Origin: Stylophora pistillata | Taxonomy: Eukaryota | Length of the DNA: 64,000 nucleotides | Direction: 5' to 3' | Assembly: GCF_002571385.2 (NCBI RefSeq) | Contig: NW_019217964.1 | Location: 1 to 64,000 of the forward strand | Shown: piece after piece, positions 1,525 through 57,894 of the stretch | How the letters are laid out: every line of letters starts with the position of its first letter | Position numbering within the stretch: position 1 is the stretch's first letter | Notes under the pieces: model-generated | Databases searched by the model: none | What the model was told of the DNA's origin: nothing | What the model saw: the letters and a program-made list of their open reading frames with translations, nothing else | Program-made: the position numbers and the translations under genes

Positions 1525-1740
1525 CTAAAAAACATCAAGCTGCGAGGTAGCTCCAGCCGACACGTTTTTGTCAAATTCACTGCTATAACCCAGTTTTGAG
1601 TTTCCTCTCGCTCTATCTTTTTCCAGCTGGCGTCGCCAGTAAAGACAGCAGAGTATTAAAGTAAGAACACACAAAGCCAACACTCCGAAAACCACTCCAA
1701 CGATGAGAATGGTCTTTTCTGAAATTTCCTGACTCGCCAT
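1525..1740 (-). CDS. Small single-pass membrane protein (71 aa, MASQEISEKTILIVGVVFGVLALCVLTLILCCLYWRRQ...)
   Basis: ATG at 1740 (ttaATGG); ~23-aa hydrophobic stretch followed by CC and basic residues; a candidate 5'UTR intron ~1818-1946 (gt...cag). No family recognised. Confidence 0.45.
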   Translation of the reverse strand: MASQEISEKTILIVGVVFGVLALCVLTLILCCLYWRRQLEKDRARGNSKLGYSSEFDKNVSAGATSQLDVF

Positions 1741-2329
1741 TAATCCACTGAGCACAATTAATAAAACGGCTGCTGCTGAAGTGTAAATTTTTACGCCGTC
1801 TTCGTGCTCTTGCACTTCTGAAGCGATGATTTAGATTTGAAGAAGTATATGTTTGTTATTTTATCAAATGTTAATATATGTTACTGTTGGTTCGCGTGAA
1901 TTGAGAAACTTTGCACAATAGAGTCGGCCTTTTCCAGTTAGATACCTGAGGGTTTGTAGTTAGAATTTTAAGAGGCGTTTCAAACCAGTGATGCTNNNNN
2001 NNNNNNNNNNNNNNNNAAATTGCGTTTTTAACAATCTTTTTTTTTCTTATGTTCTCAATAGGATACATCTATTGCAATCATGATTCAAAAAGGCCTGTAT
2101 AGTGAGCTCGAGAGCAGGAAATTCAGTTTCTCAAGTTCAGTCCGTAGTCGCCCGCGATCGTTAATGACAGCTGCTGCATTAAAAGTGCACGCGCAAACAT
2201 GCACGAGTTTAAAATCACGAATAAAATTTTAAAGAATTTTAACGGATTTGTTTACTTTATTTATGTCAGCGATCGTCGGGTATTTTGGTTATCAAGTTGG
2301 CACAAACATGAACTTGAGTTTGTAGAAGA

Positions 2330-5300
2330 ATGAGAATACTTACCGTTTTGTTGCTTTTATCAAGTTCAATTCCATCCCGAAGCGATTTGATTGCGAAAAG
2401 CAGCATAACTATTTGAGAAAATTCTGGCGGCGGAGACGATCCAATGAGTGTCGTGTACGAGAAAGCATGCGAGAAAAAGCTAATTGTTACCATGTCAGTT
2501 AGAAGTGGACAGGTAAGAGCTCTTTTAAGTTCTCTCCAGCAAGTTCAGTTCACAAGAATAAAATGTATGTTTTGATTACTCTTCAGCATGGAACTGAGCT
2601 TAGCCTAAAAAGAAACTGTAGTTTCAGTAAAATGGCGATTTTGCAGCAGCTTTAGGATAAGGATTTCCTTTTCCCAATATAAATACACATATAATGGAAA
2701 GCATATTTTTTGTCAGTGATTTCAACTATAGGAAGGAACCACGTTTTCATGATCACGTTTTGATGTCTTTAAGTTCCTTCAATGGAATCATTGTTCATCT
2801 TTGCGATTGAAGACGAAGGGTACCGGGCTGATGTTTATCAAGATTTTATCAATAAGCTGAAAATAGGACGATTTACTGAGATCAATTCATTTTTGCACAT
2901 TATTTTGCGGGAAAAAATATTCTTCCATTTAGATCTCCAATATCAAAATTTGTTTACAACTAACTTTGACCATATCGCCTGGCTATAAATATCCTGTTGA
3001 TGAAAACCGTTTAAACAAAAAAACTATGTGAGAAATGTGTTGTTGATGGAAGTTTATTCACAGGTGAGCTTTGATTAAAAAGGTTCCTTTCNNNNNNNNN
3101 NNNNNNNNNTGAAAAACCTGAAATGCATTCAGAAGTTTACGCGGGAAAACTGAAGCATCTCTGTCCTGACATAGTTGGCAGAGGGAACTGGTACCAGTCC
3201 CCTCTGCTAACTATGGTCCTGATTGGTTTGAATGAGGGCTGCATGGACCAAGCACTAATGGAAAACGTTGCAGCGGTTGTAAACTGTATTGTGCCATTTT
3301 TGTTGCAGGTACACAGTGAACGAGTTGGGGCGATGGGAAATGGAATTCGGCATTCACGTGAAAACCTTTGATCAAATAACCACAAAGGAAGGGAATGTGA
3401 CAAAACCTAAGTGGATCCCTGGTGGGGAGATTGTCATAGGACCACATGTACGGAGGGGAAGGGGGAAATATGGCAGGGTAGGTATATCTCGTGACAATGA
3501 AACTGTTACGTCAGGTCAAGACAGCAGTTTGATTATGTGAGTCTTAATCAGCTGAAAAGTACCTTTCACCTTAGTCCTATAGATACCAAACTCGCATGAA
3601 GAGGATTTAAAGTTACTCCTTTTATAACTAGGAAACAGGTTAACTGAACTGTGAAATGTTGAATAATGATAAATTGTCTCGTATTCCTTACAGCTTCTTG
3701 CAAGTTATATTGGTGAGTTCCAGTCCCACAGACAGTTTCCAACCTTGACTGAGAAGTTCCTCCTCATTCCGTACGTCACCGATAAGATCGACCCTAAGAT
3801 GCATCCACAGCTGAGGGTAGGAAATTAGGCATCTGTTTTTCTCCAAATTAATTTGTATTTAGCGAATAATTTGCTAACTTGGTCTGTTTAGTTTACAACA
3901 CTATCAGCGCAAACTACCTAGGATTATCAGCGGTCACGGGTGGTCCATACGCGGCTGATCAGTCTAGTGGTCCCACGCACGCGCAACTCATGATAGTGCC
4001 TCCCAGTGGGCTGCAGTTTTTAAATCACGCAGTTCCATCTTACCGATGTTTTATAGGGATCTACGATACTGACCATCGAGACAGAAGGACAGAATAAACC
4101 AACACAATGACCTCTTTTTATTACAACATTAAAAGCACAAACTCTAAAAATGAACGCTAATCATATCACAGCTTCGCTTAGCTGTGTTTGACCAATGACT
4201 CAGTGAACACGATTCATTTTTCTAAGCCAATCAGGCAGTTTGTGCTCTGTCGTTCATCCAACTTTCTCGTGAACTTCGATTAAATTTTTCGCAGGATTGA
4301 AAGGAGTGAAAAGAGACCACTGCCATCTTTCTTTTGCAGGTTTCTTCACGTTTTAAGCCGTCGGTCTTGTCGCACTCATTGATATAATGCAGCTGGGCTG
4401 ATAAGTCATAACGGATGTTTAATAAGTGTCATGCAGACGGGATGATAAGACTAATCAATACCTATTTCTTCATGCAGGACGGACCAGCGGATTACATGAT
4501 AATAGACAAACATGAAGTAAACTACAAACCGAGCGGACCTCATGAATGTGATAAGATAGGTGTCACTTATACTGCTTTCAGGAATCAACAACCCGCTGGC
4601 TGCCAACAGAAAAAGGGCGCGTAAGTTCCGAGCTCACTGGTTATTTACTTCTTCACTTGCGATAAAAAAAATGAGGTGTTCATTCATGTTCTTTCACCAT
4701 TTGTCCCCTACGATTGACTAGAATCTAATTCCCCTTAAACCCTTTCACTCCAAGAGGTGATTAACATGAAAATTCTCCCTATTATATCCGTACATTATCC
4801 AGCAAACAGGTAACGAGAATACTCAAACTTATCAAGAAGCTGTTATCCTGATCTAAGATCAAAATTTTATAAAAGAATTATAAGGAAATGTATNNNNNNN
4901 NNNNNNNNNNNNNNNNNNNNNNNNNNNNNNNNNNNNNNNNNNNNNNNNNNNNNNNNNNNNNNNNNNNNNNNNNNNNNNNNNNNNNNNNNNNNNNNNNNNN
5001 NNNNNNNNNNNNNNNNNNNNNNNNNNNNNNNNNNNNNNNNNNNNNNNNNNNNNNNNNNNNNNNNNNNNNNNNNNNNNNNNNNNNNNNNNNNNNNNNNNNN
5101 NNNNNNNNNNNNNNNNNNNNNNNNNNNNNNNNNNNNNNNNNNNNNNNNNNNNNNNNNNNNNNNNNNNNNNNNNNNNNNNNNNNNNNNNNNNNNNNNNNNN
5201 NNNNNNNNNNNNNNNNNNNNNNNNNNNNNNNNNNNNNNNNNNNNNNNNNNNNNNNNNNNNNNNNNNNNNNNNCGCTCTATCCATTGAGCTAACTGGGAGG

Positions 5301-8300: not shown

Positions 8301-10285
8301 GTTGTTGTCACTCGATAAGCTGTCAAAAAAGCTGTGTTGCAGACTACAAGTGACTACTATGCTACCTGTCTCTAAAAGAATAACCTTTCTAGCAACGAAA
8401 AGGAGTGTTTTTCCAAAATGGAAACCCTTATTTAAAGTTAGTAACTTTTATATTTTGCAGTAAGGAGGTCACCAAGCCACGAAACAAAACCAAAGAATTT
8501 CTGTTCAACCTTATNNNNNNNNNNNNATGTCACTTCTACCCTGATGAAACTAGACGCATATTTGCGTGTACGCAGACGCATTTAACGGAAAAATCTGGGC
8601 ACAGGCTTTAACATTTGCAAAGGATATAAAAAAATGTCATCCCCTCAGCCCGCTTTGTACATCCACGTGCTTTTCAACTAGTTCTTTAAGCCTGTACCTT
8701 GATATGTTAAGTCTTACTGATACAGATTTTTTAATATAATATAAAGTAATTATATAGAATGTCCTAGGCTGTTAAGCATACCTTTGTAAGTGGAGCTATG
8801 TCAAACTCAAGTTGTTGTTGTCACTCGATAAGCTGTCAAAAAAGCTGTGTTGCAGACTACAAGTGACTACTATGCTACCTGTCTCTAAAAGAATAACCTT
8901 TCTAGCAACGAAAAGGAGTGTTTTTCCAAAATGGAAACCCTTATTTAAAGTTAGTAACTTTTATATTTTGCAGTAAGGAGGTCACCAAGCCACGAAACAA
9001 AACCAAAGAATTTCTGTTCAACCTTATTTTCTTCCTTATCCTTCCTTTCTTACCGCTTTTTAAACTTGGTAGAAAGATCATAAAATGTTGTAAAAAGGAT
9101 TCTAATGCAAAGAAAGAACAAGGAAAACAAGACGAAAGTGAAGAAGACGGAAAAGTGAAAGGACCAGATGTGGACATCTTTAAAGGAGACATCATGAAAG
9201 ATGCAAGTCTGCGCGCGGAGAGTAGTCAAAGCGTGAAACTTTCCGGTGAAAAAGCGGGGGTTTCGCGAGAAAGCAAAGAGAACGTAACCACGATCAAGCA
9301 AAGCCGCACAAATAGCTTAGTGATCAAAACGAGCGAGCATGGTGAAGAAAATAACATTGCAACTGGCGGAGGTTCCCAAGGAACCAAGCGCAAAATTAGC
9401 GCACAAGGGAGTAGGCGAGCGAGTAAGGAGCACGTGACTGAACCTCTAACAAACAAACTTACCAGTAAAGGAAAGGAGGAAGATACGGGAACTTCACACG
9501 TGACTGAACCGTCAGCAGACAAACCTACCAGTGAAGGAAAGGAGCAAGATATGGGAACTTCCCACGTGACTGAACCGCTAGCAGACAAACCTACCAGTAA
9601 AGGAAAGCAGCAAGATACGGAAACTTCACACGAGACTGAACCGTCAGCAGACGAACCTACCAGCAAAAGAAAGGAGCAAGATACGGAAACTTCACAAGTG
9701 ACTAAACCGTCAGCAGACAAACTCACCAGCAAAGGAAAGGAACAAGATGCGGGAATTTCACACCAATCTAACAAACTGACTGTGAAGAAAACTGAACCCT
9801 CAGAGCCACAGGTAAGAGATAATTATGTCGGTGTCTTGGAGACTGAACGAAATTTGCTGAAATTACTTACTATTAAATTATACTTCATTCTTCGGTCGTT
9901 AGAGATGAATGGAAATTGGGGTAGATAAACAATTTCGAAGTCCTTGGTACTTCGTATTGCTCTTTTAGCCGGAAAAATTGATGGTTTTTCTTTCCGGCAA
10001 AAGCCCTATCATTTATGGGACCCCTTCCCCCCACCCCTCCACACTTCGCCCCATTTTCCAATAACTTACTCCGGATTTTGAGGGACTCATGACTAAGAAA
10101 TCATTATACAGTTTATTCAAAATTCACACCCCCCTTGTTTCATTCAGGTTCCAGAAGATATCAGACAGCTCACAGAGGCTAATCCGTTAATTTATCACAA
10201 TTACTTCGATACAGACGCTGTTGCTGATGAACTTGAGGTACGGCCTGTCTCACAGTACGAACGACTCCTCGTGGAGGCTATATAA
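2330..10285 (+). pseudogene. HAP2: HAP2/GCS1 class II gamete fusogen, apparently disabled
   Basis: Exons: 2330-2512 (signal peptide, ...SSITI*ENSGGGDDP..ACEKKLIVTMSVRSGQ), 2586-~2600 (HGTE, then breaks off), 3309-3477, 3694-3816, 4478-4620 (ECDKIGVTYTAFRNQQPAGCQQKKG = HAP2-GCS1 motif), 5639-5681 (CLNNQPKDYFEDD), 5801-5988 (SMVTLQISADDIILIYNR), 6331-6442 (FEA..G.L.V.VQNTG), 6926-7061, 7371-7468, 7609-7973 (TM), 8974-9811, 10148-10285; phases are consistent from 3309 onward. In-frame TGA at 2414-2416; exons for the PTCG/SQGFCC/AHC region not found. Family identity is confident; pseudogene status less so because of an N gap at 3092-3109. Confidence 0.85.
9431..9760 (+). repeat. 66-bp coding tandem repeat (5 x 22 aa, HVTEPSADKPTSxGKEQDxxTS) in HAP2 C-terminal region
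   Basis: cacgtgactgaacc recurs at 9431, 9497, 9563 and, diverged, at the same 66-nt spacing twice more. Confidence 0.9.
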
Positions 10286-10744: not shown

Positions 10745-11111
10745 CAGCCGGGGGTCCAGCCGGGGGTCCAGCCGGGGATCCAGCCGGGGGTCCAGCCGGG
10801 GGTCCAGCCGGGGGTCCAGCCGGGGGTCCAGCCGGGGGTCCAGCCGGGGGTCCAGCCGGGGGTCCAGCCGGGGGTCCAGCCGGGGGTCCAGCCGGGGGTC
10901 CAGCCGGGGGTCCAGCCGGGGGTCCAGCCGGGGGTCCAGCCGGGGGTCCAGCCGGGGGTCCAGCCGGGGGTCCAGCCGGGGGTCCAGCCGGGGGTCCAGC
11001 CGGGGGTCCAGCCGGGGGTCCAGCCGGGGGTCCAGCCGGGGGTCCAGCCGGGGGTCCAGCCGGGGGTCCAGCCGGGGGTCCAGCCGGGGGTCCAGCCGGG
11101 GGTCCAGCCGG
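10745..11111. repeat. 12-bp GC-rich minisatellite (CAGCCGGGGGTC)n running into an N gap
   Basis: About 30 near-perfect copies visible. Confidence 0.95.
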
Positions 11112-15600: not shown

Positions 15601-18600
15601 TTTGCTGGCAATAAGTCCATGTTGTCTTGCAATACTGAAAAGAAATGAAATGAATCGTCACCATCAATGCTATTGTACGTTAAGGGCTTTCGAACTTAAT
15701 GTCACACCAGCAATGAGGGATGAGTGCGCTATGTCGCTTTTTGTTTTATGTACAAATCAAGAACTCCTTCGAAAAAGAGAGGCGTGGTCATTTGCACCCA
15801 TAACCAACCCTCCTCCTTAAAAACAAGCTAACATCTTCTTGCCACAGACATCTTGACCAGGATAAAGTAAGAAGATAAGAGATGAGCTGCTCTCAAACAA
15901 GAACAAGCAACGTATGATGCACGATCCTCGCAGTAGAGAGCGCTATTTAAGCAATAGCGAAAATCAGACCTGAAGAAAATCAGGCCTGTACGGGATTCGA
16001 ACCACTGACCTCTGCGATACTAGTGCAGCGCTCTACCAATTGAGCTAACAAGCCAACTGGGAGCAGGCCGTTAAGTTGATTCGTAATAAACCCGTGATGA
16101 TAAATCAGATACAATGAATATATGAAGTTCATATATTTTGAACTGCGGTTGTAGATACGTATGATGCACGATCCTCGCAGTAGAGAGCGCTATTTATGCA
16201 ATAGCGAAAATCAGACCTGAAAAAAATCAGGCCTGTACGGGATTCGAACCACTGACCTCTGCGATACTAGTGCAGCGCTCTACCAATTGAGCTAACAAGC
16301 CAACTGGGAGCAGGCCGTTAAGTTGATTCGTAATAAACCCGTGATGATAAATCAGATACAATGAATATATGAAGTTCATATATTTTGAACTGCGGTTGTA
16401 GATACGTATGATGCACGATCCTCGCAGTAGAGAGCGCTATTTATGCAATAGCGAAAATCAGACCTGAAAAAAATCAGGCCTGTACGGGATTCGAACCACT
16501 GACCTCTGCGATACTAGTGCAGCGCTCTACCAATTGAGCTAACAAGCCAACTGGGAGCAGGCCGTTAAGTTGATTCGTAATAAACCCGTGATGATAAATC
16601 AGATACAATGAATATATGAAGTTCATATATTTTGAACTGCGGTTGTAGATACGTATGATGCACGATCCTCGCAGTAGAGAGCGCTATTTATGCAATAGCG
16701 AAAATCAGACCTGAAAAAAATCAGGCCTGTACGGGATTCGAACCACTGACCTCTGCGATACTAGTGCAGCGCTCTACCAATTGAGCTAACAAGCCAACTG
16801 GGAGCAGGCCGTTAAGTTGATTCGTAATAAACCCGTGATGATAAATCAGATACAATGAATATATGAAGTTCATATATTTTGAACTGCGGTTGTAGATACG
16901 TATGATGCACGATCCTCGCAGTAGAGAGCGCTATTTATGCAATAGCGAAAATCAGACCTGAAAAAAATCAGGCCTGTACGGGATTCGAACCACTGACCTC
17001 TGCGATACTAGTGCAGCGCTCTACCAATTGAGCTAACAAGCCAACTGGGAGCAGGCCGTTAAGTTGATTCGTAATAAACCCGTGATGATAAATCAGATAC
17101 AATGAATATATGAAGTTCATATATTTTTTTTTTATATATGAACTTCATATATCTATTGTATCTGATTTATACATATCCATATATCCATATATCAATATGG
17201 ATATATGGATATATGGATATGTATAAATCAGATACAATAGATATATGAAGTTCATATATAAAAAAAAAATATATGAACTTCATATATTCATTGTATCTGA
17301 TTTATCATCACGGGTTTATTACGAATCAACTTAACGGCCTGCTCCCAGTTGGCTTGTTAGCTCAATTGGTAGAGCGCTGCACTAGTATCGCAGAGGTCAG
17401 TGGTTCGAATCCCGTACAGGCCTGATTTTTTTCAGGTCTGATTTTCGCTATTGCATAAATAGCGCTCTCTACTGCGAGGATCGTGCATCATACGTATCTA
17501 CAACCGCAGTTCAAAATATATGAACTTCATATATTCATTGTATCTGAAGAACAAGCAAACAAATAGTAAACACTAAAACAGGCCAACAAATAGTGTAAAT
17601 GCATAATGAAGGTTTAAGAGACTTTGAACTAGGCCGTTTTCGATATATAAAATTCTGACAAGGCTTCTAGTCAAGAGGGGGGGGGATAAACAAAAGAGAT
17701 TATTTATTCATCCCTCAACCTCGATGCGATTGCTTTTGTTTTATTCCCCTAAGCCTGCAAGCCAAGTTTGAATTTAAATATATCGAAAATGGCCTATTAC
17801 AATCTTTCAAAACGTACCCTACTTTGATAAACAGCTTTAAGGTTACTTCCCACCTTTGCGAGTGTGTCCTTCGAGAAAAAATTCGCACGCGCGCTAGTTT
17901 CAAGAAAACCCTAACAAACTATACATAAAAAGAAAGTTTAATAAGTTTGTAAACAACTAGCGCCAAACCAGATTATCTCGCCTCTTGAAACCGCGAACCA
18001 ATGAGAAGATGGGACTTCCTGGCGTGAATGACAAGGGATCAAGATTTTCCAGAGAAAAGTATCGCATAGCACTCACGTTTTTTTATCTCGCTCTATTGAA
18101 CGTTGAGTAATGGGCAAAGTTGGCAAAGGAAAAACCCACGACAAAACTGACGGCAAAAAGGGTAAAGCTGAAAATACTGCTGAAAAGTAAAACAGCGAAT
18201 CGTTAGGTAAGATGTCTAACTTCAATCTGGTCCAATAAAAAAAAAAACGATTTTGTCGCCCTCTGAAGGTGGGAAGTAACCTTAAAAGCTGTAAGGGAAG
18301 TGTGCGTCAAAATGTTTCACAGAAAAAGTTCGTTGTACTCACTTCTTTCTGCGTTGTCTTTCCTTGAGTCTTCTTAGATACATATCTATTATACCTAGCT
18401 TTAAATCTACAAAACAAAACAGAGCCAAGATTACTGGAACTATCTGTGTACATAGTGCTGTAAGGAGATAATTACCGGATTCTTATTCACTAATTTCAAC
18501 AGGGATGGCTGTGAAACCCTTTCAGATGTCTAGCAAACACTTTTAATTACCAAGTTTGAATTTCTTCACCCTTACCTACTTCCACATCCTCATCATCATA

Positions 18601-21600
18601 ACTGAACTGTAAACCACTAACAAGAGTTTCAGCCTCGTTATCATACTCCTGCAAAAAAAAAAAAAAAACATTCAGAGTTACTCCCCAATTTCTCACATAT
18701 TGCGTCACGATGGATAGTGCTATCCAATAATGGCACATAGACCAGATCCTTTGGGCAATATTGGTCTGTATTGACTTAATGCTAGAGTGCTCAGTAAACT
18801 TCTGAGGTCAAAGAATTCTCTTGCAACAAGAATACAGAATTCTCTTGTTCAATTTTGATGGTGTAACCCTTTTCTTTTTGTTTAGACATTAAGAGTATTT
18901 TTATGTTCATTTAATCTATCCATCTGCCACTGCCCGGTCAACGAAATGTTGTACACAAGAACAATAACACCTAATTTAAACACCCAGAGTGAGTGACTCC
19001 ATTAAGGCTAAGCTCTTTGCTTGACTCTCAATGACTCTTAATTTATTCATTTTCTCATCTAATGTATATATATCTTAGTTTTGTTATTTCATTCTCACTT
19101 GATAATGACGTTCTGAAACTGTCAAAACGTCATGTAATGTTTTCCAATATTTTATTGCAGATTTTTATTGTAAAACATCTGCCATTTCGTTTCTTATTTG
19201 AAACAACTAAGCACTGGACTGATTTAAACACTGATAAGATAGCACTGTACCACCTTTTCGAAGTCATCTCTGAGTGGCATATATCCTAGCTCCTGCTGTT
19301 CAGTTACATTCATCTCCACAGGTTCAGGGGGGTGCAAAAGTGTCGGTGACAGTACCTCTGTGAGTTGGAGAGAGATACAGGCCTCTTAGATACATTACTT
19401 AATACTTTATTCCAAGGAGCTCATTGAAATATCTAGACACTTTTAAAACGACAATCATGACTAAATGATAAACAGTCCAGATTCTACATGAAACTTCAGC
19501 CAGTTCAAAGGTCATGGGCATTGTATTCTAATAACTTTATATTTTGGTACATGGGGGTATTATTGATTATTACACGACTCGGGCAGTCAGAGGGCCAATA
19601 ACTAAAATCAACCAATCAAAATGCTCTATTGCCGGTCCAATATTCTCTGAGTATTGGACCGGGCACTGTCCTGAATGGTCCGAATGATACCGCACTTGTG
19701 TCCCTTTGAACTTCAGTCGTGTAATAAATCTCTTATTAACCAAGCTTGCTCGGGACCGTACTGGAAGAATATCGGCCCTCGGTCTTTTTTGTACCGACCT
19801 CGCTGCACTCGGTCCGTACTGTCAAGACCTCGGGCCGATATTCTCCCAGTACGGCCCTCGCGCTTGGTTAATAAGATATATGTATTATTTTTTTGTTGTT
19901 GTTTGCCATACCTTGATCAGCAGATGTATGATCAACTATTTTGTTCTTAAAAGGTTCAACAGTTGCTAAAACACAAAAAACAGAAAATGATAAAATCATT
20001 TTAGAAGATCAGAGAAACTGGGTTGAAACCTATTCTGACTTTAGACACAGCACTTAGTAGCTTTGATGTGATTCAGTTGTTCTTTCTGTATCCAGCAGAA
20101 ATATCCACTAATGAGAAGTAACCTATTAACCTAGAATACCTAGGTTTTCAAGGAAAAAGAGTTTCCGAAAGAGATATTTAATTCATCAGTCATGATGTAA
20201 TACTAAATAAACATTGAGAAAACATTCTGTTGTAATATTGCCGTTCTGTTGTTAAGGCTGGGCTCCCTGTGCCCTGCCCCCATTTTGCATGACCAGCGGT
20301 TTCACTTTATGGCTATTTGTTATTGTGACCGCCATTTTGTATTTAGTCTTTAGTTAGGTTCTAAGTGAAGTAAGGCCTATTAAAGGTTCGAACTCAACAC
20401 ATTGTGCTGGTAACTCAAGTAACATTGAACCCCTTCTAAATAATGATCCAGTTTGCAAAATATTCTATTGGGGGAAACAAATGACAAACGACAAACTCAG
20501 AGAATACAAACTTACTGTATAGCCCTGAGCAACAGAAAACTCACTGTAAGATAAGCTTATGAAACAATTTCCACAAATTGTTACCTTTTCCAACAACTCC
20601 TGAGATGTAATTGTCAGCATAATGTTCACTGGTCTCTGTTGATAAAAATTAAATTTCATTGAGAAAAGGCAGTGGAAAAAGAGCAGCAGAATAATTACAA
20701 ATAACATGAAGTTCTTTACCTGATTAATAACAGCTTTTACTCCCAAATTGCCTTTGCCTCAAAAGCTAAACTAATCATCTAAAATATGTCTTGAAGAAAT
20801 ATTTGATTCTTAACATTTACTGGAAAATTTTTATCAGTAAGTTGCCTTTGGTTTCTTTACCAATCAGTATTTTGAGATTGGTTTTATGTAATTCCCTGAT
20901 GGCAAAAAAAGACTTCAAATTTTGTCGTCAATAATAAAGGTTTGAACAGATTGTAAGTAGTTAATATGTCAATTATCAGATGATTAATTAATTAATCAAC
21001 AGATTGAAGATGTGGCTGACCTTTGCCTGTTTTGGTACCAATGTGATCAGCAACATCATCCCTGAAAAAAAAAAACAAAAACAAGTTGAGAAAGAGGCAG
21101 TGTGGCCGAGTGGTTAGAGTGTCGGACTCGTAATCCGCCGCTCCCGGGTTCGAGTCCCTCCCTGACCACTAGATTTGTTTCATGGTAGCCCCATGTTCAG
21201 ATCCTTGGCCACACTTGTAAATAGCCAACTGGTTTGCCTCCGGCCGGTTGGGGTTCTTAATGATGTTCTTTTCAATTTAGACCATTTGTTTCATTTGTTT
21301 GCAAGGACCACAATGGAAACTACTGGTTCACCAGTAATTGTGTAATCCTATAAAAAGACTTTTTTTTTTTTTTTTAATAATAGGGGTAAAAGGAAAAAGC
21401 TGAAATGTATCACATCCCAATGATTATGTATTTGCCACTATCTCCTCAAAAACTGTTGGTGGTGCCAAATGTAAAACACACATTGTAAAACTATAATTAT
21501 AACATAACCAAAGTAAAGCGCGCGCTCTGATTGGTCAATTTAGCGTCCCCCATTTGCCCATTGCTGCTGACGTGAGCAAATGCAACGACTATTTTTCCGC

Positions 21601-50672: not shown

Positions 50673-51078
50673 AATATATAAAACTTGTATATCTGAACTG
50701 CGGTTATAGAAACGTATTTGTGCACGATTCTCGCAGTAAAGAAATGGAGGAAACATAACATTATACACTTGAAACAAAGTAAAGTTAAAAACGTATTTAT
50801 GCACGATCCTCGCAGTAGAGAACACTATTAAACCGCTAGTTAAAATCAGACCTGATTTTAATTTGATGACCTGCTCTCAGTTGGCTTGTTAGCTCAATTG
50901 GTAGAGTGCTGCACTAGTATTGCAGAGGTCAGTGGTTCAAATCTTGTACAGGCCTGAATTTTTTCAGGTCTGATTTTCACTAGCGGTTAAATAGTGTTCT
51001 CTACTGCGAGGATCGTGCATAAATACGTTTTTAACTTTACTTTGTTATCAAGTGTATAATGTTATGTTTCCTCCATTT
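50673..51078. mobile_element. tRNA-derived element of the same family, monomer with tail-out inverted arms
   Basis: tRNA-like 50883-50955 (+); ~50742-50855 is the reverse complement of ~50964-51078. Confidence 0.75.
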
Positions 51079-55232: not shown

Positions 55233-57894
55233 ATGGAATTGCTCTATTTTTTTGAATCTACTGCGCAGCTTGATGATGACTATCATGATTCGTGTTTATC
55301 TCTCTACAATGCTTTCAAGTCCTCTCACACGGGAGAGATTTGGAAGATCAGAGAGATTTGGAAGGTCAGTTGCAACTATTAACCTGCTCTCTCTTTCGTG
55401 TGTGATTGCTTGTTTGTAGTTCGTCTTTTCTTAACGGCATAACGGAGTGATGTACGAGTTCAGCGGATCTGTGCGAGATTCTGATGTTTGGTTCAGCGTG
55501 ACATGCACGCACACACGAAACGAACCGCGTCTTTAATTCGATTAGAAGGACTCCGAGTTGTGCGTTTCCGGATATCCTGATATGATGAAATTCGAATATC
55601 ACTGATATTTTGTCGAGCTCGTAGTCGCATAAACTAAGATGTGTAATTAAAGGCTTATAGCATTAAGGATATGCTGCACTGTGTGGTTTAAGTCGCTTAA
55701 CGGTCTTTAATATTAAAGTAAGGGTTATTTGACGAACGTCACAATATGTGATGCACTCTACCTGTAACGTCTCATACACTTGTTGTACTCTATTGTTGCA
55801 GATTCCTGGCGAACACAAGTTGATAGGAGGTTAGAATTTAAGACTGTAAATCGATGGAGTTTTCAATTGCCAAGAAACATTCATAGTAATCTGTGAAAGG
55901 TGACAAAAGTAGGTAGAGAAAAGGAAAGTAGAGGCTTCTCGAAAATACGGTTTATTAACTTATGGGTATCCCATTGGTTTACCAGCTTAATTTTTTGCTG
56001 TGGAATTCAATTCCATTTTTTCACCTACTGATAGATCGCTCTTCTGAACGATTCGTTTCGTCATTTTTCTACAGTCATCAGTGTAGATTCGCCAGGAAGA
56101 CTGGATTCTTGGGCTGAGTCTTCTTGGGAGCATTTGGTAAATGGAATTTCTACTGTTTTCACCCCATTGCGGCCTTACGAAGATTTTGCCGCCAATGTTA
56201 GGGACTGGCTGAAGGAAGATGTCAATATCAGTCCTGAGTATTGTCCATCAAAAAGCGGTCTACATTATTTTCTCACATTTACAGTGGAATATGAAGGTAA
56301 AGATAAAACGTTCTGCACCAAAAATCTTCCATTGACGAGCCTCTCACGTCTTCCCCGCTCATCAATTCAGCGCACACAAAACCTCCAACTACAAAAAGTC
56401 AGTCATTCAGTCAGGCAATCAGGCAGTGAACATTGTCATTCGTCCGTCAGTCTGATTTGAAAGGTTGTTTAAAAGGATGGGGTTTCCCTTGATTTTAAAC
56501 TAGGGCACTCGCAGCGACAGAGGCCCTCTTGTCTACGCGCAGGATAACATTATTAAAATTAAGTTTTTCGAATTATGTTCCTTCTACTAGGCATGACACA
56601 AGAAGAGCTCTTCAAAGTCTGGATTGATGAAGCAAAAGCTGCTCTGGAAGCGAAGAAATCTGGAACTATATTGGACTTGTGGAAAGTGGTGGCACAACGA
56701 AAGGTGATGTCAGTCAGACTCAGTTCCACTCGCTGTTTTTTATTTTATCTAATTTATATTTTGTTTGTTTGTTTTTTTTATTTTTAAGGAGGAGGGACTA
56801 CAACTGGGGTTCAGAACTTTGCATGGGTTTAAGAGCTGTTTCAGATGATACAGCATAAATTGCTCTACTGAACAGCGATTGATCACAAATTAGGCTTAAG
56901 ATACAATGAAATATATGAAGTTCATATATTTTGAACTGCGGTATTAGATACATATGATGCACGATCCTCGCAGTAGATAGCGCTATTTAAGCAATAGCGA
57001 AAATCAGACCTGAAAAAAATCAGGCCTGTACGGGACTCAAACCACTGACCTCTGCGATACTAGTGCAGCGCTCTACCAATTGAGCTAACAAGCCAACTGG
57101 GAGCGGGCCGTTAAGTTGATTCGTAATAAACCCGTGAAAGTGATAAATGAGATACAATGAAATATATGAAGTTCATATATTTTGAACTGCGGTGTTAGAT
57201 ACATATGATGCACGATCCTCGCAGTAGATAGCGCTATTTAAGCAATAGCGAAAATCAGACCTGAAAAAAATCAGGCCTGTACGGGACTCGAACCACTGAC
57301 CTCTGCGATACTAGTGCAGCGCTCTACCAATTGAGCTAACAAGCCAACTGGGAGCCGGCCGTTAAGTTGGTTCGCAATAAACCCGTGAAAATGATAAATG
57401 AGATACAATTAAATATATGAAGAGGTCAGTGGTTCGAGTCCCGTACAGGCCTGATTTTTTTCAGGTCTGATTTTCGCTATTGCTTAAATAGCGCTAACTA
57501 CTGCGAGGATCGTGCATCATATGTAAATTAGGCTTACTACACAATACAGGCCCAACCCGCTAAAGCGGAGACTAAGTTTTTCCCTCTTTTACGCTTATTT
57601 AGTTTACATTTAATTAATATAAAATTTTGTTTCCTTTGGAAATGTGTACTGGTAAAAGTTACACGGCAGCGGGATTGTTGGCTAAAATATCTGATCCGGT
57701 ATTTACAGGTTTTTGCCATCGTGTGTGTTGAAAAACCAGGAGACCTGGACCAGATATCATTTGAATTGCCAATCATGAAGAAGATAGGCGATAAAGTCCA
57801 TATCACATGCAAATCTATTCGACAAGCTGATGACTGGATGAAAGAAGTCGAAGAGAAGATTTTTATCGCGAAATCGACGACAGCCAGCGGTTGA
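55233..57894 (+). CDS. Muconolactone delta-isomerase (CatC/MIase)-like protein with two tandem domains, 226 aa
   Basis: Exons 55233-55364, 55802-55829, 56075-56296, 56591-56703, 57709-57894 (681 nt, open). Domain 2 HYFLTFTVEYEGMTQEELFKVWIDEAKAALEAKKSGTILDLWKVVAQRKVFAIVCVEKPGDLDQISFELPIMKK resembles bacterial MIase-family proteins; domain 1 repeats the WK..G.HK.I.VISVDSP..LD...TPLRPYEDFA pattern. Family assignment is from recall. Confidence 0.75.
56899..57524. mobile_element. tRNA-derived tandem array (about 2.1 x 251 bp) plus inverted arm, flanked by 12-bp TSD
   Basis: Units at 56899, 57150, 57401; inverted piece ~57422-57524; AAATTAGGCTTA at 56887-56898 and 57525-57536. Confidence 0.9.

What the first reader, a model, noticed from the sequence alone, without database searches (positions are those of the whole stretch)
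15899..17558. tRNA-like ~250-bp unit moves as tandem arrays with an inverted arm and 12-bp TSDs: candidate ribozyme-free retrozyme-like / Penelope-mobilised element
Seen: two independent intronic insertions (15911-17546 and 56899-57524) share one architecture: head-to-tail units (247 or 251 bp), then an inverted arm, all bounded by a perfect 12-bp direct repeat (AAGAACAAGCAA; AAATTAGGCTTA). Both outer ends are 3' ends of the tRNA-sense strand (tail-out). In both insertions the outer ends fall at the same two positions of the unit, one at AGATACAATG and one at C(G/A)TATGATGC, about 55 nt apart, swapped between long and short arm. Both long arms stop at the ATATATGAAGTTCATATAT hairpin. Units are near-identical within an array but differ between arrays. 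Known: tail-out inverted arms, an optional 3' tail and variable TSDs typify Penelope-like elements; metazoan non-LTR retrozymes are 170-400-nt tandem units with hammerheads that form circular RNAs. Inference: I find no hammerhead core in this unit; a tRNA-like fold (Pol III A/B boxes, possible RNase P/Z substrate) may take that role, giving a circular or multimeric RNA that is reverse-transcribed at the target.
Basis: partly seen in the sequence, partly recalled or inferred. Interest (0 to 1): 0.85.

Follow-up and report, generated by a model that had tools for sequence, protein, structure and literature searches.

The report
tRNA-carrying repeat inserted the Penelope way
A ~250-bp coral repeat built around a tRNA-Thr-like gene has copied itself into hundreds of sites with the insertion pattern typical of Penelope-like retrotransposons, so it looks like a hammerhead-free, tRNA-bearing passenger of those elements.

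Summary
Window 15911-17546 and 56899-57524 are two insertions of one family. Each has head-to-tail 247/251-bp units with a tRNA-Thr-like gene, an inverted arm and perfect 12-bp TSDs. Both outer ends are 3' ends of the tRNA-sense strand.

The genome is Stylophora pistillata and holds at least 743 candidate places. In 12 of 12 gap-free two-armed copies there, and 5 of 5 in a related ~80%-identical family from coral-host metagenome contigs, one end lies at site A and the other at site B, about 50 nt further on. TSDs are 9-14 bp and AT-rich. Inner ends are variable, and 5'-truncated single-arm copies exist.

This matches published Penelope-like element (PLE) behaviour: both target strands extended, two RT start sites, and a tail at one end only. 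No hammerhead or other ribozyme is present. Stem-loops around sites A and B are conserved with compensatory changes. The tRNA core and a T-run after it are the most conserved parts.

The PLE reading is well supported by geometry, but the autonomous partner was not found. The circular-RNA or RNase P/Z idea has no support so far.

The scan's first stage noted this family on several other pieces of this genome; none was followed up. I class it as a new variant of a known kind.

The parts
15899..15910 (.). left target-site duplication of insertion 1 (12 bp)
   Evidence: Identical 12-mer at 17547-17558.
15911..17127 (-). Long arm of insertion 1: 4.9 head-to-tail 247-bp units, tRNA-sense on the minus strand. 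The outer end is site A (unit position 247) and the inner end is unit position 19.
   Evidence: TRF; BLAST to the unit. Units 2-5 are 100% identical; the outermost unit has 2 differences.
15982..16054 (-). tRNA-Thr(AGT)-like gene of the first unit. Further copies at 16229-16301, 16476-16548, 16723-16795 and 16970-17042 (minus strand) and at 17351-17423 (plus strand).
   Evidence: ARAGORN; Rfam tRNA 48.9 bits. A box at unit 111-122, B box at 155-165, T7 run at 179-185.
17128..17265 (.). Palindromic junction between the arms. It holds a T-run, a unit 22-58 fragment, an AT-rich palindrome, the inverted 22-58 fragment and an A-run. The centre is at 17196/17197.
   Evidence: the repeat finder I1, I10, I11; BLAST. 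Its origin is unexplained, and the sequence is also repeated elsewhere in the genome (depth).
17266..17547 (+). Short arm of insertion 1: unit positions 19-247 followed by the tail 1-53. The outer end is site B.
   Evidence: BLAST; 100% identical to the unit.
17446..17464 (+). Hairpin 2 (unit 199-217).
   Evidence: 7-bp stem with compensatory changes in 3 pairs across families.
17471..17510 (+). Stem-loop A: stem formed by unit 224-229 with 11-16. The loop contains site A (17494|17495), which is read through in this arm.
   Evidence: Stem kept in 13 of 15 diverged sequences; C-G changed to T-A in L069, L073 and L131. Also part of the MFE fold.
17516..17534 (+). Hairpin 3 (unit 22-40), about 10 nt upstream of site B.
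   Evidence: 94% of cells paired across 15 sequences.
17547..17558 (.). Right target-site duplication of insertion 1.
   Evidence: The first A can belong either to the element or to the TSD.
56887..56898 (.). Left TSD of insertion 2 (12 bp).
   Evidence: Identical 12-mer at 57525-57536.
56899..57422 (-). Long arm of insertion 2: 2.1 units of a 251-bp subfamily (94-96% identical to the main unit). The outer end is site B (position 51) and the inner end is position 31, inside hairpin 3.
57421..57524 (+). Short inverted arm of insertion 2: unit positions 145 to 248. The outer end is site A.
57525..57536 (.). Right TSD of insertion 2.
50690..51075 (.). Older, CpG-decayed relative. A tRNA-Thr-like gene (50883-50955, plus strand) is flanked by inverted copies of the post-tRNA region and of a different ~50-nt tail.
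   Evidence: 84-91% identity to the unit.

Best explanation
This is a non-autonomous retroelement family of scleractinian corals. Its ~250-nt unit is a tRNA-Thr-derived Pol III gene module (A and B boxes, T-run) joined to a structured spacer. It is copied into the genome by the machinery of a Penelope-like element (PLE).

Inferred mechanism:
1. A tRNA-sense transcript longer than one unit is bound by a PLE RT/GIY-YIG protein, probably a dimer. The transcript cannot be an ordinary Pol III transcript, because it must run through the T-run.
2. Binding is at stem-loop A and hairpin 3.
3. The protein nicks both strands of an AT-rich target about 12-13 bp apart.
4. Each 3' OH primes cDNA on the RNA. 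One strand starts at site A, in the loop of stem A. The other starts at site B, about 50 nt downstream and just after hairpin 3.
5. Both cDNAs run towards the RNA 5' end for variable distances.
6. They are then joined, often at the palindromic hairpins, where two antisense cDNAs can anneal.

The result is two arms of head-to-tail units with 3' ends outward, a ~50-nt tail at one end only, and a TSD.

What is shown: the geometry, the two fixed end sites and their strict pairing, the TSDs, the conserved structures, and the presence of many PLE genes in the genome.

What is inferred: the identity of the enzyme, the polymerase that makes the template, the dimer model, and the role of the tRNA module.
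For: Geometry and ends
- Two-armed, 3'-ends-out insertions occur at many loci; units are 97-100% identical at 743 candidate places.
- One A end and one B end in 12 of 12 gap-free copies in this genome and 5 of 5 in the related family M from coral-host metagenome contigs. The chance is 7.6e-6 if the ends were independent and equally likely.
- End positions scatter by a few nt with microhomology to the target: A at 237-248, B at 44-57.
- Inner ends are variable. Thirteen of 30 lie at the two palindromic hairpins against 6.6 expected, P=0.007, with windows chosen after seeing the data.
- Single-arm, 5'-truncated copies have 10-11-bp TSDs (L073, L125).
- TSDs are 9-14 bp, mean 11.9, with AT content 0.79 against 0.60 for the window.

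Agreement with the PLE literature
- Partial tandems, an inverted 5'-truncated copy, and a tail at only one end (PMC8557442).
- Both strands cleaved and extended, two internal RT start sites whose spacing equals the tail, start in a stem-loop, AT-rich targets (PMC11167929).

Conserved RNA signals and PLE genes
- Stem A, hairpin 2 and hairpin 3 are conserved with compensatory changes. The unit RNA folds with z = -6.1.
- PLE genes are abundant: 1590 GIY-YIG candidates, with several families of identical scores and long open frames. One is an RT plus C-terminal GIY-YIG ORF.
Against: - No autonomous PLE sharing the unit's 3' region was found. The one PLE family I could read (L064) has no similarity to the unit.
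- No RT ORF lies within 2-10 kb of any of about 110 unit loci.
- The tail is ~50 nt rather than the published 30-40.
[quoted passage not shown] The strict A/B pairing seen here is therefore not explained by published biochemistry.
- RNA-seq shows no strand bias and no RNA ends at A or B.
- The conserved T-run means the template cannot be an ordinary Pol III transcript, so the source of the template is unknown.
Confidence: 0.75

Rival explanations
1. A PLE-mobilised element whose template is a unit-length circular RNA or a processed monomer. The tRNA fold is cut by RNase P and/or RNase Z in place of a hammerhead, the RNA is ligated, and it is copied by rolling-circle reverse transcription.
For: - Arrays of up to 7 units identical to each other (L031, L034).
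- The tRNA core, A/B boxes and T-run are the most conserved parts across 16 diverged families.
- Coral hammerhead retrozymes of similar size do form circles (PMC7229834).
- Four of 30 inner ends lie exactly 3' of site A or site B, which could mark defined RNA 5' ends.
Against: - Inner ends do not cluster at the tRNA ends 104/176.
- Arrays such as L036, L042, L055 and L056 are mosaics of subfamily variants.
- Identical inner units may come from short-read gap filling.
- Both RNA strands are equally covered, and no unit-length ends are seen.
- Cutting at both tRNA ends would remove the tRNA from the template.
- RNase P/Z products carry 5'-phosphate and 3'-OH ends, not the ends used by the RtcB route shown for retrozymes (established enzymology; PMC7229834).
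Confidence: 0.12
2. An ordinary tRNA-derived SINE mobilised by a LINE. The inverted arms would arise by twin priming, and the tandem units by template switching or later duplication.
For: - A tRNA-derived head with A/B boxes.
- 5' truncation and TSDs of 9-14 bp are also typical of LINE target-primed reverse transcription.
- Twin priming is known to give 3'-ends-out inversions (established knowledge of L1).
Against: - No poly(A) or microsatellite tail at any end.
- A conserved Pol III terminator lies directly after the tRNA.
- The outer end of the inverted arm is fixed at one of two sites rather than at random internal positions, and A and B are always paired.
- The inverted arm is the rule rather than a minority of copies.
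- No LINE ORF or shared LINE tail is seen in the held DNA.
Confidence: 0.08
3. A foldback-type or MITE-like DNA transposon. Its long inverted arms would be made of tandem subrepeats and it would move by cut-and-paste.
For: Long inverted arms built of tandem repeats, a perfect central palindrome in insertion 1, and a fairly narrow TSD range.
Against: - The two termini are not inverted copies of each other; one is ~50 nt longer.
- Ends vary by several nt.
- Arm lengths and inner junctions differ in every copy.
- 5'-truncated single-arm copies have TSDs.
- TSD length varies from 9 to 14 bp.
Confidence: 0.03
4. The architecture is an assembly artefact of a collapsed satellite.
For: Many arrays abut N gaps. 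Inner units equal the genome consensus while outer units carry private CpG-type changes. A perfect 351-nt palindrome is suspicious.
Against: The same geometry with TSDs is found inside contigs of independent metagenome assemblies from other coral material. Contigs of two other DNA runs continue from both flanks into the element.
Confidence: 0.02

Closest known systems
Penelope-like elements (canonical EN+ clades and Naiad/Chlamys): insertion architecture and mechanism
   Same: Partial or full tandems; an inverted 5'-truncated copy with 3' ends outward; a short tail at one end only; palindromes at the inverted junction; short AT-rich TSDs; two internal RT start sites near a stem-loop; both target strands used as primers (PMC8557442, PMC3846280, PMC11167929).
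   Different: There is no RT/EN ORF; the whole element is a ~250-nt unit. The tail is ~50 nt rather than 30-40. The unit carries a tRNA gene module. There is no hammerhead, as in Naiads. A/B pairing is strict in the 17 resolved copies. No sequence link to an autonomous PLE has been shown yet.
Metazoan non-LTR retrozymes (tandem 170-400-nt hammerhead repeats, described in corals, mussels and amphibians; proposed PLE passengers)
   Same: Unit size; tandem multimers; low GC content; TSDs longer than 4 bp; the coral host; highly structured unit RNA; presumed dependence on PLEs (PMC7229834; bioRxiv 10.64898/2026.07.22.740005).
   Different: The defining type I hammerhead is absent on both strands, so self-cleavage and RtcB circularisation cannot be assumed. 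A tRNA-Thr-like Pol III unit is present instead.
Non-autonomous Chlamys elements of Chlamydomonas (for example MRC1) and pLTR-mediated trans-mobilisation of host genes in Adineta vaga
   Same: Hammerhead-free non-autonomous sequences moved by PLE machinery, with pLTR-like repeats and multicopy head-to-tail insertions (PMC8557442, PMC3846280).
   Different: In those cases similarity to the 3' end of an autonomous family was shown. None of them carries a tRNA gene, and the hosts differ.
tRNA-derived SINEs (LINE-dependent)
   Same: A tRNA-derived module with A and B boxes; non-autonomous; hundreds to thousands of copies; frequent in introns.
   Different: A terminator lies right after the tRNA, so Pol III cannot transcribe the tail. 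There is no A-rich or microsatellite 3' end. Insertions are multimeric and two-armed with two alternative 3' ends.
L1 twin priming
   Same: The second target strand primes on the RNA and yields an inverted 5' segment with its 3' side outward, inside one TSD pair.
   Different: In L1 the second priming site is an arbitrary internal position chosen by microhomology. Here it is one of two fixed sites and is always the complement of the site used on the other strand.

Membership tests
PLE-type insertion (non-autonomous derivative of a Penelope-like element) | Head-to-tail tandem or partial-tandem copies | tested here: met
PLE-type insertion (non-autonomous derivative of a Penelope-like element) | Adjacent inverted 5'-truncated copy, with 3' ends facing the flanks | tested here: met
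   Present in every gap-free multi-unit copy; optional in family M.
PLE-type insertion (non-autonomous derivative of a Penelope-like element) | Short 3' extension (tail) at only one end of the insertion | tested here: met
   17 of 17 two-armed copies have one A end and one B end. The tail is 49-53 nt, longer than the published 30-40.
PLE-type insertion (non-autonomous derivative of a Penelope-like element) | Short TSDs at AT-rich targets | tested here: met
   9-14 bp, AT content 0.79 against 0.60.
PLE-type insertion (non-autonomous derivative of a Penelope-like element) | The 3' region or pLTR is shared with an autonomous PLE of the same genome | tested here: inconclusive
   The L064 family shows no similarity. 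The other GIY-YIG families listed could not be fetched, and the window's own genome is left out of the look-up of encoding contigs.
PLE-type insertion (non-autonomous derivative of a Penelope-like element) | RT + GIY-YIG genes present and apparently recent in the host genome | tested here: met
Metazoan non-LTR retrozyme | Type I hammerhead ribozyme in each unit | tested here: not met
   No hammerhead in Rfam at E<=10. None at the gathering score in about 300 kb. No CUGANGA box on either strand of either family.
Metazoan non-LTR retrozyme | Tandem units of 170-400 nt | tested here: met
   247-251 nt.
Metazoan non-LTR retrozyme | Abundant unit-length circular RNA | not testable with these tools
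   Short RNA-seq reads cannot tell circles from tandem transcripts. Both strands are covered equally.
tRNA-derived SINE | tRNA-derived head with internal Pol III promoter | tested here: met
tRNA-derived SINE | A Pol III transcript spans the whole element up to a LINE-type 3' tail (A-rich, microsatellite or LINE-derived) | tested here: not met
   A T5-T13 run lies directly after the tRNA in all 16 family representatives. No A-rich or simple-repeat end is present.
Foldback / TIR DNA transposon | Both termini are inverted copies of each other, with precise ends | tested here: not met
   The termini are offset by ~50 nt and scatter by several nt.

The most novel reading that the evidence does not exclude
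Corals carry a second kind of Penelope passenger in which a working tRNA-Thr-type Pol III module does the job that the hammerhead does in retrozymes. It would define unit-length RNA through RNase P/Z-type processing or Pol III start and stop, and feed a circular or multimeric template to the PLE enzyme. If so, small tRNA genes can be recruited as processing modules of retroelements, and PLE-dependent, SINE-like elements form a class of their own.
Probability: 0.12. Interest if true: 0.85.

Novelty: new variant of a known kind. Interest (0 to 1): 0.62.

Why it matters
PLE integration is the least understood retrotransposition pathway, and PLE enzymes are now being studied as insertion tools.

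A 250-nt natural substrate with hundreds of young copies gives a compact map of the cis signals: two start sites, stem-loop A and hairpins 2 and 3. It also shows a strict rule, one A start and one B start per insertion, that the published biochemistry does not yet explain. These predictions can be tested directly in the existing in vitro system.

The element also shows that PLE passengers need not carry a hammerhead. That widens the search for such elements, which repeat annotators are likely to file as tRNA genes, SINEs or satellites.

The conserved tRNA-plus-terminator module inside a retroelement that Pol III cannot transcribe in full is an open question.

Tried and rejected
Searching for the autonomous partner
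- I listed GIY-YIG places in the genome and fetched one of them (L064). It is an RT plus GIY-YIG ORF with no similarity to the unit.
- Three other S. pistillata PLE proteins could not be located, because records of the window's own genome are left out of the look-up of encoding contigs.
- tblastn with the PLE ORF against all held DNA found nothing near any unit.
- Long ORFs beside metagenome copies are host genes or a Helitron.
- A relaxed BLAST of the unit against masked held DNA found no tail-only relatives.
- Repeats in L064 were uninformative about its pLTR.

Ribozymes
- Rfam gathering scans of the window and 40 loci found only tRNA hits.

Structure of stem A
- RNAalifold did not predict stem A, and the MAFFT alignment put its 3' strand one column out of register, so undercounts it.
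- I recounted it per sequence.

RNA evidence
- RNA-seq gave no strand bias and no processing ends.
- A pile of read starts at 15991 (unit position 167) is best read as host tRNA-Thr reads clipped at a differing acceptor stem, not as an element RNA end.

Readings rejected
- DNA transposon, LINE-type SINE and pure assembly artefact; see the rival explanations.
Full report
**What is in the window**

TRF reports 4.9 copies of a 247-bp unit at 15910-17127 and 2.1 copies of a 251-bp unit at 56899-57422. Every unit holds a tRNA-Thr(AGT)-like gene by ARAGORN and by Rfam (48.9 bits, gathering score 29).

I use unit coordinates in tRNA sense, defined as the reverse complement of window 16158-16404. The landmarks are:
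- stem A 3' strand: 11-16
- hairpin 3: 22-40
- tRNA: 104-176 (A box 111-122, B box 155-165)
- T7 run: 179-185
- hairpin 2: 199-217
- stem A 5' strand: 224-229

Insertion 1 is built as follows:
- a minus-strand arm at 15911-17127, running from unit position 247 inward to position 19;
- a 138-bp palindromic centre;
- a plus-strand arm at 17266-17547, covering positions 19-247 and then 1-53.

Insertion 2 is a minus-strand arm from position 51 inward to position 31, then a plus-strand arm covering positions 145-248. Both insertions are bounded by perfect 12-bp repeats.

**Genome-wide behaviour**

The genome is Stylophora pistillata. The PLE ORF of L064 is 100% identical to an annotated S. pistillata protein on a contig of the same length as C89. 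The unit has 743 candidate places, and the scored ones are 97-100% identical.

I fetched 33 loci. The assembly is gapped. All copies that look single-armed, and all apparent exceptions to the rule below, end at N runs.

In the 12 two-armed copies without gaps:
- One outer end is at site A (positions 237-248) and the other at site B (positions 44-57). Either site can be on the long arm.
- The TSDs are 9-14 bp.
- The ends scatter by a few nt and often overlap the target by microhomology.
- The inner ends differ in every copy.

This is the behaviour of target-primed reverse transcription, not of a cut-and-paste element.

**A second lineage**

A scan of metagenome contigs with the peptide read from the unit returned 80 contigs that carry animal genes (GPCRs, kelch, TRIM-NHL). 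These are coral host DNA. They hold a ~250-nt family M, about 80% identical to the unit, plus more distant relatives.

Family M shows the same geometry:
- 5 of 5 two-armed copies inside contigs have one A and one B end, with TSDs of 8 bp or more (cut by a contig end) up to 13 bp.
- Two single-arm, 5'-truncated copies have 10- and 11-bp TSDs.

Together that is 17 of 17 A+B. The chance is 7.6e-6 if the ends were chosen independently. Over 19 insertions the TSDs average 11.9 bp and are 79% A+T, against 60% for the window. Because these contigs come from other assemblies, the architecture is not an artefact of this assembly.

**Comparison with the literature**

PLE insertions are described as 5'-truncated and organised in partial tandems. 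[quoted passage not shown] The purified Anolis PLE protein behaves as follows (PMC11167929):
- it cleaves and extends both target strands;
- it prefers AT-rich DNA;
- it starts reverse transcription at two internal RNA sites, in and near a stem-loop, whose spacing corresponds to the tail;
- it needs RNA 3' of those sites.

Every one of these points has a counterpart here. Sites A and B are the two starts. The 49-53-nt piece between them is the tail. The arms are the two primed strands. The need for downstream RNA explains why a template longer than one unit would be required.

**Cis signals**

The unit RNA is strongly structured: -79.7 kcal/mol, z = -6.1. Across 15 diverged junction sequences (alignment A1):
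- Hairpin 2 keeps 93% pairing, with double-sided changes in three pairs.
- Hairpin 3 keeps 94% pairing.
- Stem A encloses site A in a 24-33-nt loop. It is kept in 13 of 15 sequences, with C-G changed to T-A in three of them and several G-U changes.

The letters at sites A and B themselves differ between families, while the flanking stems are kept.

Thirteen of 30 inner arm ends fall at hairpins 2 and 3, against 6.6 expected (P=0.007; the windows were chosen after seeing the data). This fits the idea that two antisense cDNAs anneal at self-complementary sequences. Four inner ends lie exactly 3' of A or B, which I cannot explain.

**The tRNA module**

Across 16 family representatives the tRNA core is the most conserved region: 0.87 identical to the main unit, against 0.58-0.79 elsewhere. 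About 12 nt upstream of it and a T5-T13 run downstream are kept in all of them. The anticodon stays Thr-type.

This pattern points to a conserved Pol III unit, not just a fold. Yet the orientation of the arms shows that the template is tRNA-sense and passes through the T-run. An ordinary Pol III transcript therefore cannot be the template.

Possible roles are keeping chromatin open, binding a host factor, or RNA processing. None was tested.

**No ribozyme**

- Rfam at E<=10 over 15800-17700 gives only tRNA hits and chance microRNA-like hits on the AT palindrome.
- Gathering-level scans of the window and 40 loci give only tRNA.
- Neither strand of either family has a CUGANGA box.

**RNA and DNA reads**

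Two stranded RNA runs cover the units at depths of hundreds, while the intron flanks are near zero. Sense and antisense are about 1.1:1, and no molecule ends pile up at A, B or the tRNA boundaries.

Many reads diverge into varied AT-rich sequence exactly at site A, and others diverge near site B. This agrees with these being insertion termini genome-wide (table 7). Contigs of two 2024 DNA runs continue from both flanks into the element, and no empty-site joint was listed.

**Open points**

- The autonomous partner was not identified. See Tried and rejected for the routes that failed.
- Outer units carry private, mostly CpG-type changes, while inner units equal the genome consensus. Either young copies home into old ones, as PLEs are thought to do, or the short-read assembler filled the interiors from pooled reads. 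I cannot tell which.
- Positions 7, 8 and 45, close to A and B, are hypervariable and define subfamilies.
- The centre of insertion 1, with its T10 and A10 runs and two extra 22-58 fragments, is not explained.

**Verdict**

This is a real, recently active, non-autonomous retroelement family with the PLE insertion signature, a tRNA-Thr module and no hammerhead.

I found no description of such an element in the searchable literature. Hammerhead retrozymes and Chlamys passengers are the nearest known cases. I rate it a new variant of a known kind.

The first stage of this scan noted the same family on several other pieces of this genome. None of those notes had been followed up.

Noticed in passing
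window 50690-51075: Older, CpG-decayed member of the same superfamily. A tRNA-Thr-like gene is flanked by inverted copies of the post-tRNA region and of a different ~50-nt tail, and a further minus-strand fragment spanning site A lies to its left.
   Followed up: partly
window 21096-21167: ARAGORN calls a tRNA-Thr(CGT)-like sequence that does not reach the Rfam tRNA gathering score. The sequence after it looks like the body of a different tRNA-derived SINE.
   Followed up: no
window 10745-11111: 30.6 copies of a 12-bp GC-rich tandem repeat at 99% identity. A 66-bp x 5 repeat lies nearby at 9431-9763, inside the region another note assigns to a HAP2-like gene.
   Followed up: no
loci L031-L063 (for example L035, L036, L038, L048, L057): Within arrays the outermost units carry private, mostly CpG-type changes or deletions around the T-run, while inner units are identical to the genome-wide consensus. 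Either young copies insert into old ones or the short-read assembly filled the interiors.
   Followed up: partly
unit positions 7, 8 and 45 (for example window 17501-17502 and 17539): Three hypervariable positions close to the two end sites define subfamilies, and different states alternate within single arrays (L036, L042, L056).
   Followed up: partly
window 15991 (unit position 167): A fifth to a third of RNA read pairs in two runs start exactly at the border between the T stem and the acceptor stem. This most likely reflects host tRNA-Thr reads clipped where the acceptor stem differs from the element's.
   Followed up: no
L064 (G000 C89:137000-142000), ORF 1609-3597: Penelope-like ORF with RT and C-terminal GIY-YIG, 100% identical to an annotated S. 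pistillata protein. Its 5' part is lost in an N gap. One search indicates at least three multi-copy GIY-YIG families with identical scores in this genome.
   Followed up: partly
L090:7743-9230: Helitron-like N-terminal domain ORF in a coral-host metagenome contig, about 7.5 kb from a unit copy. It is probably unrelated.
   Followed up: no
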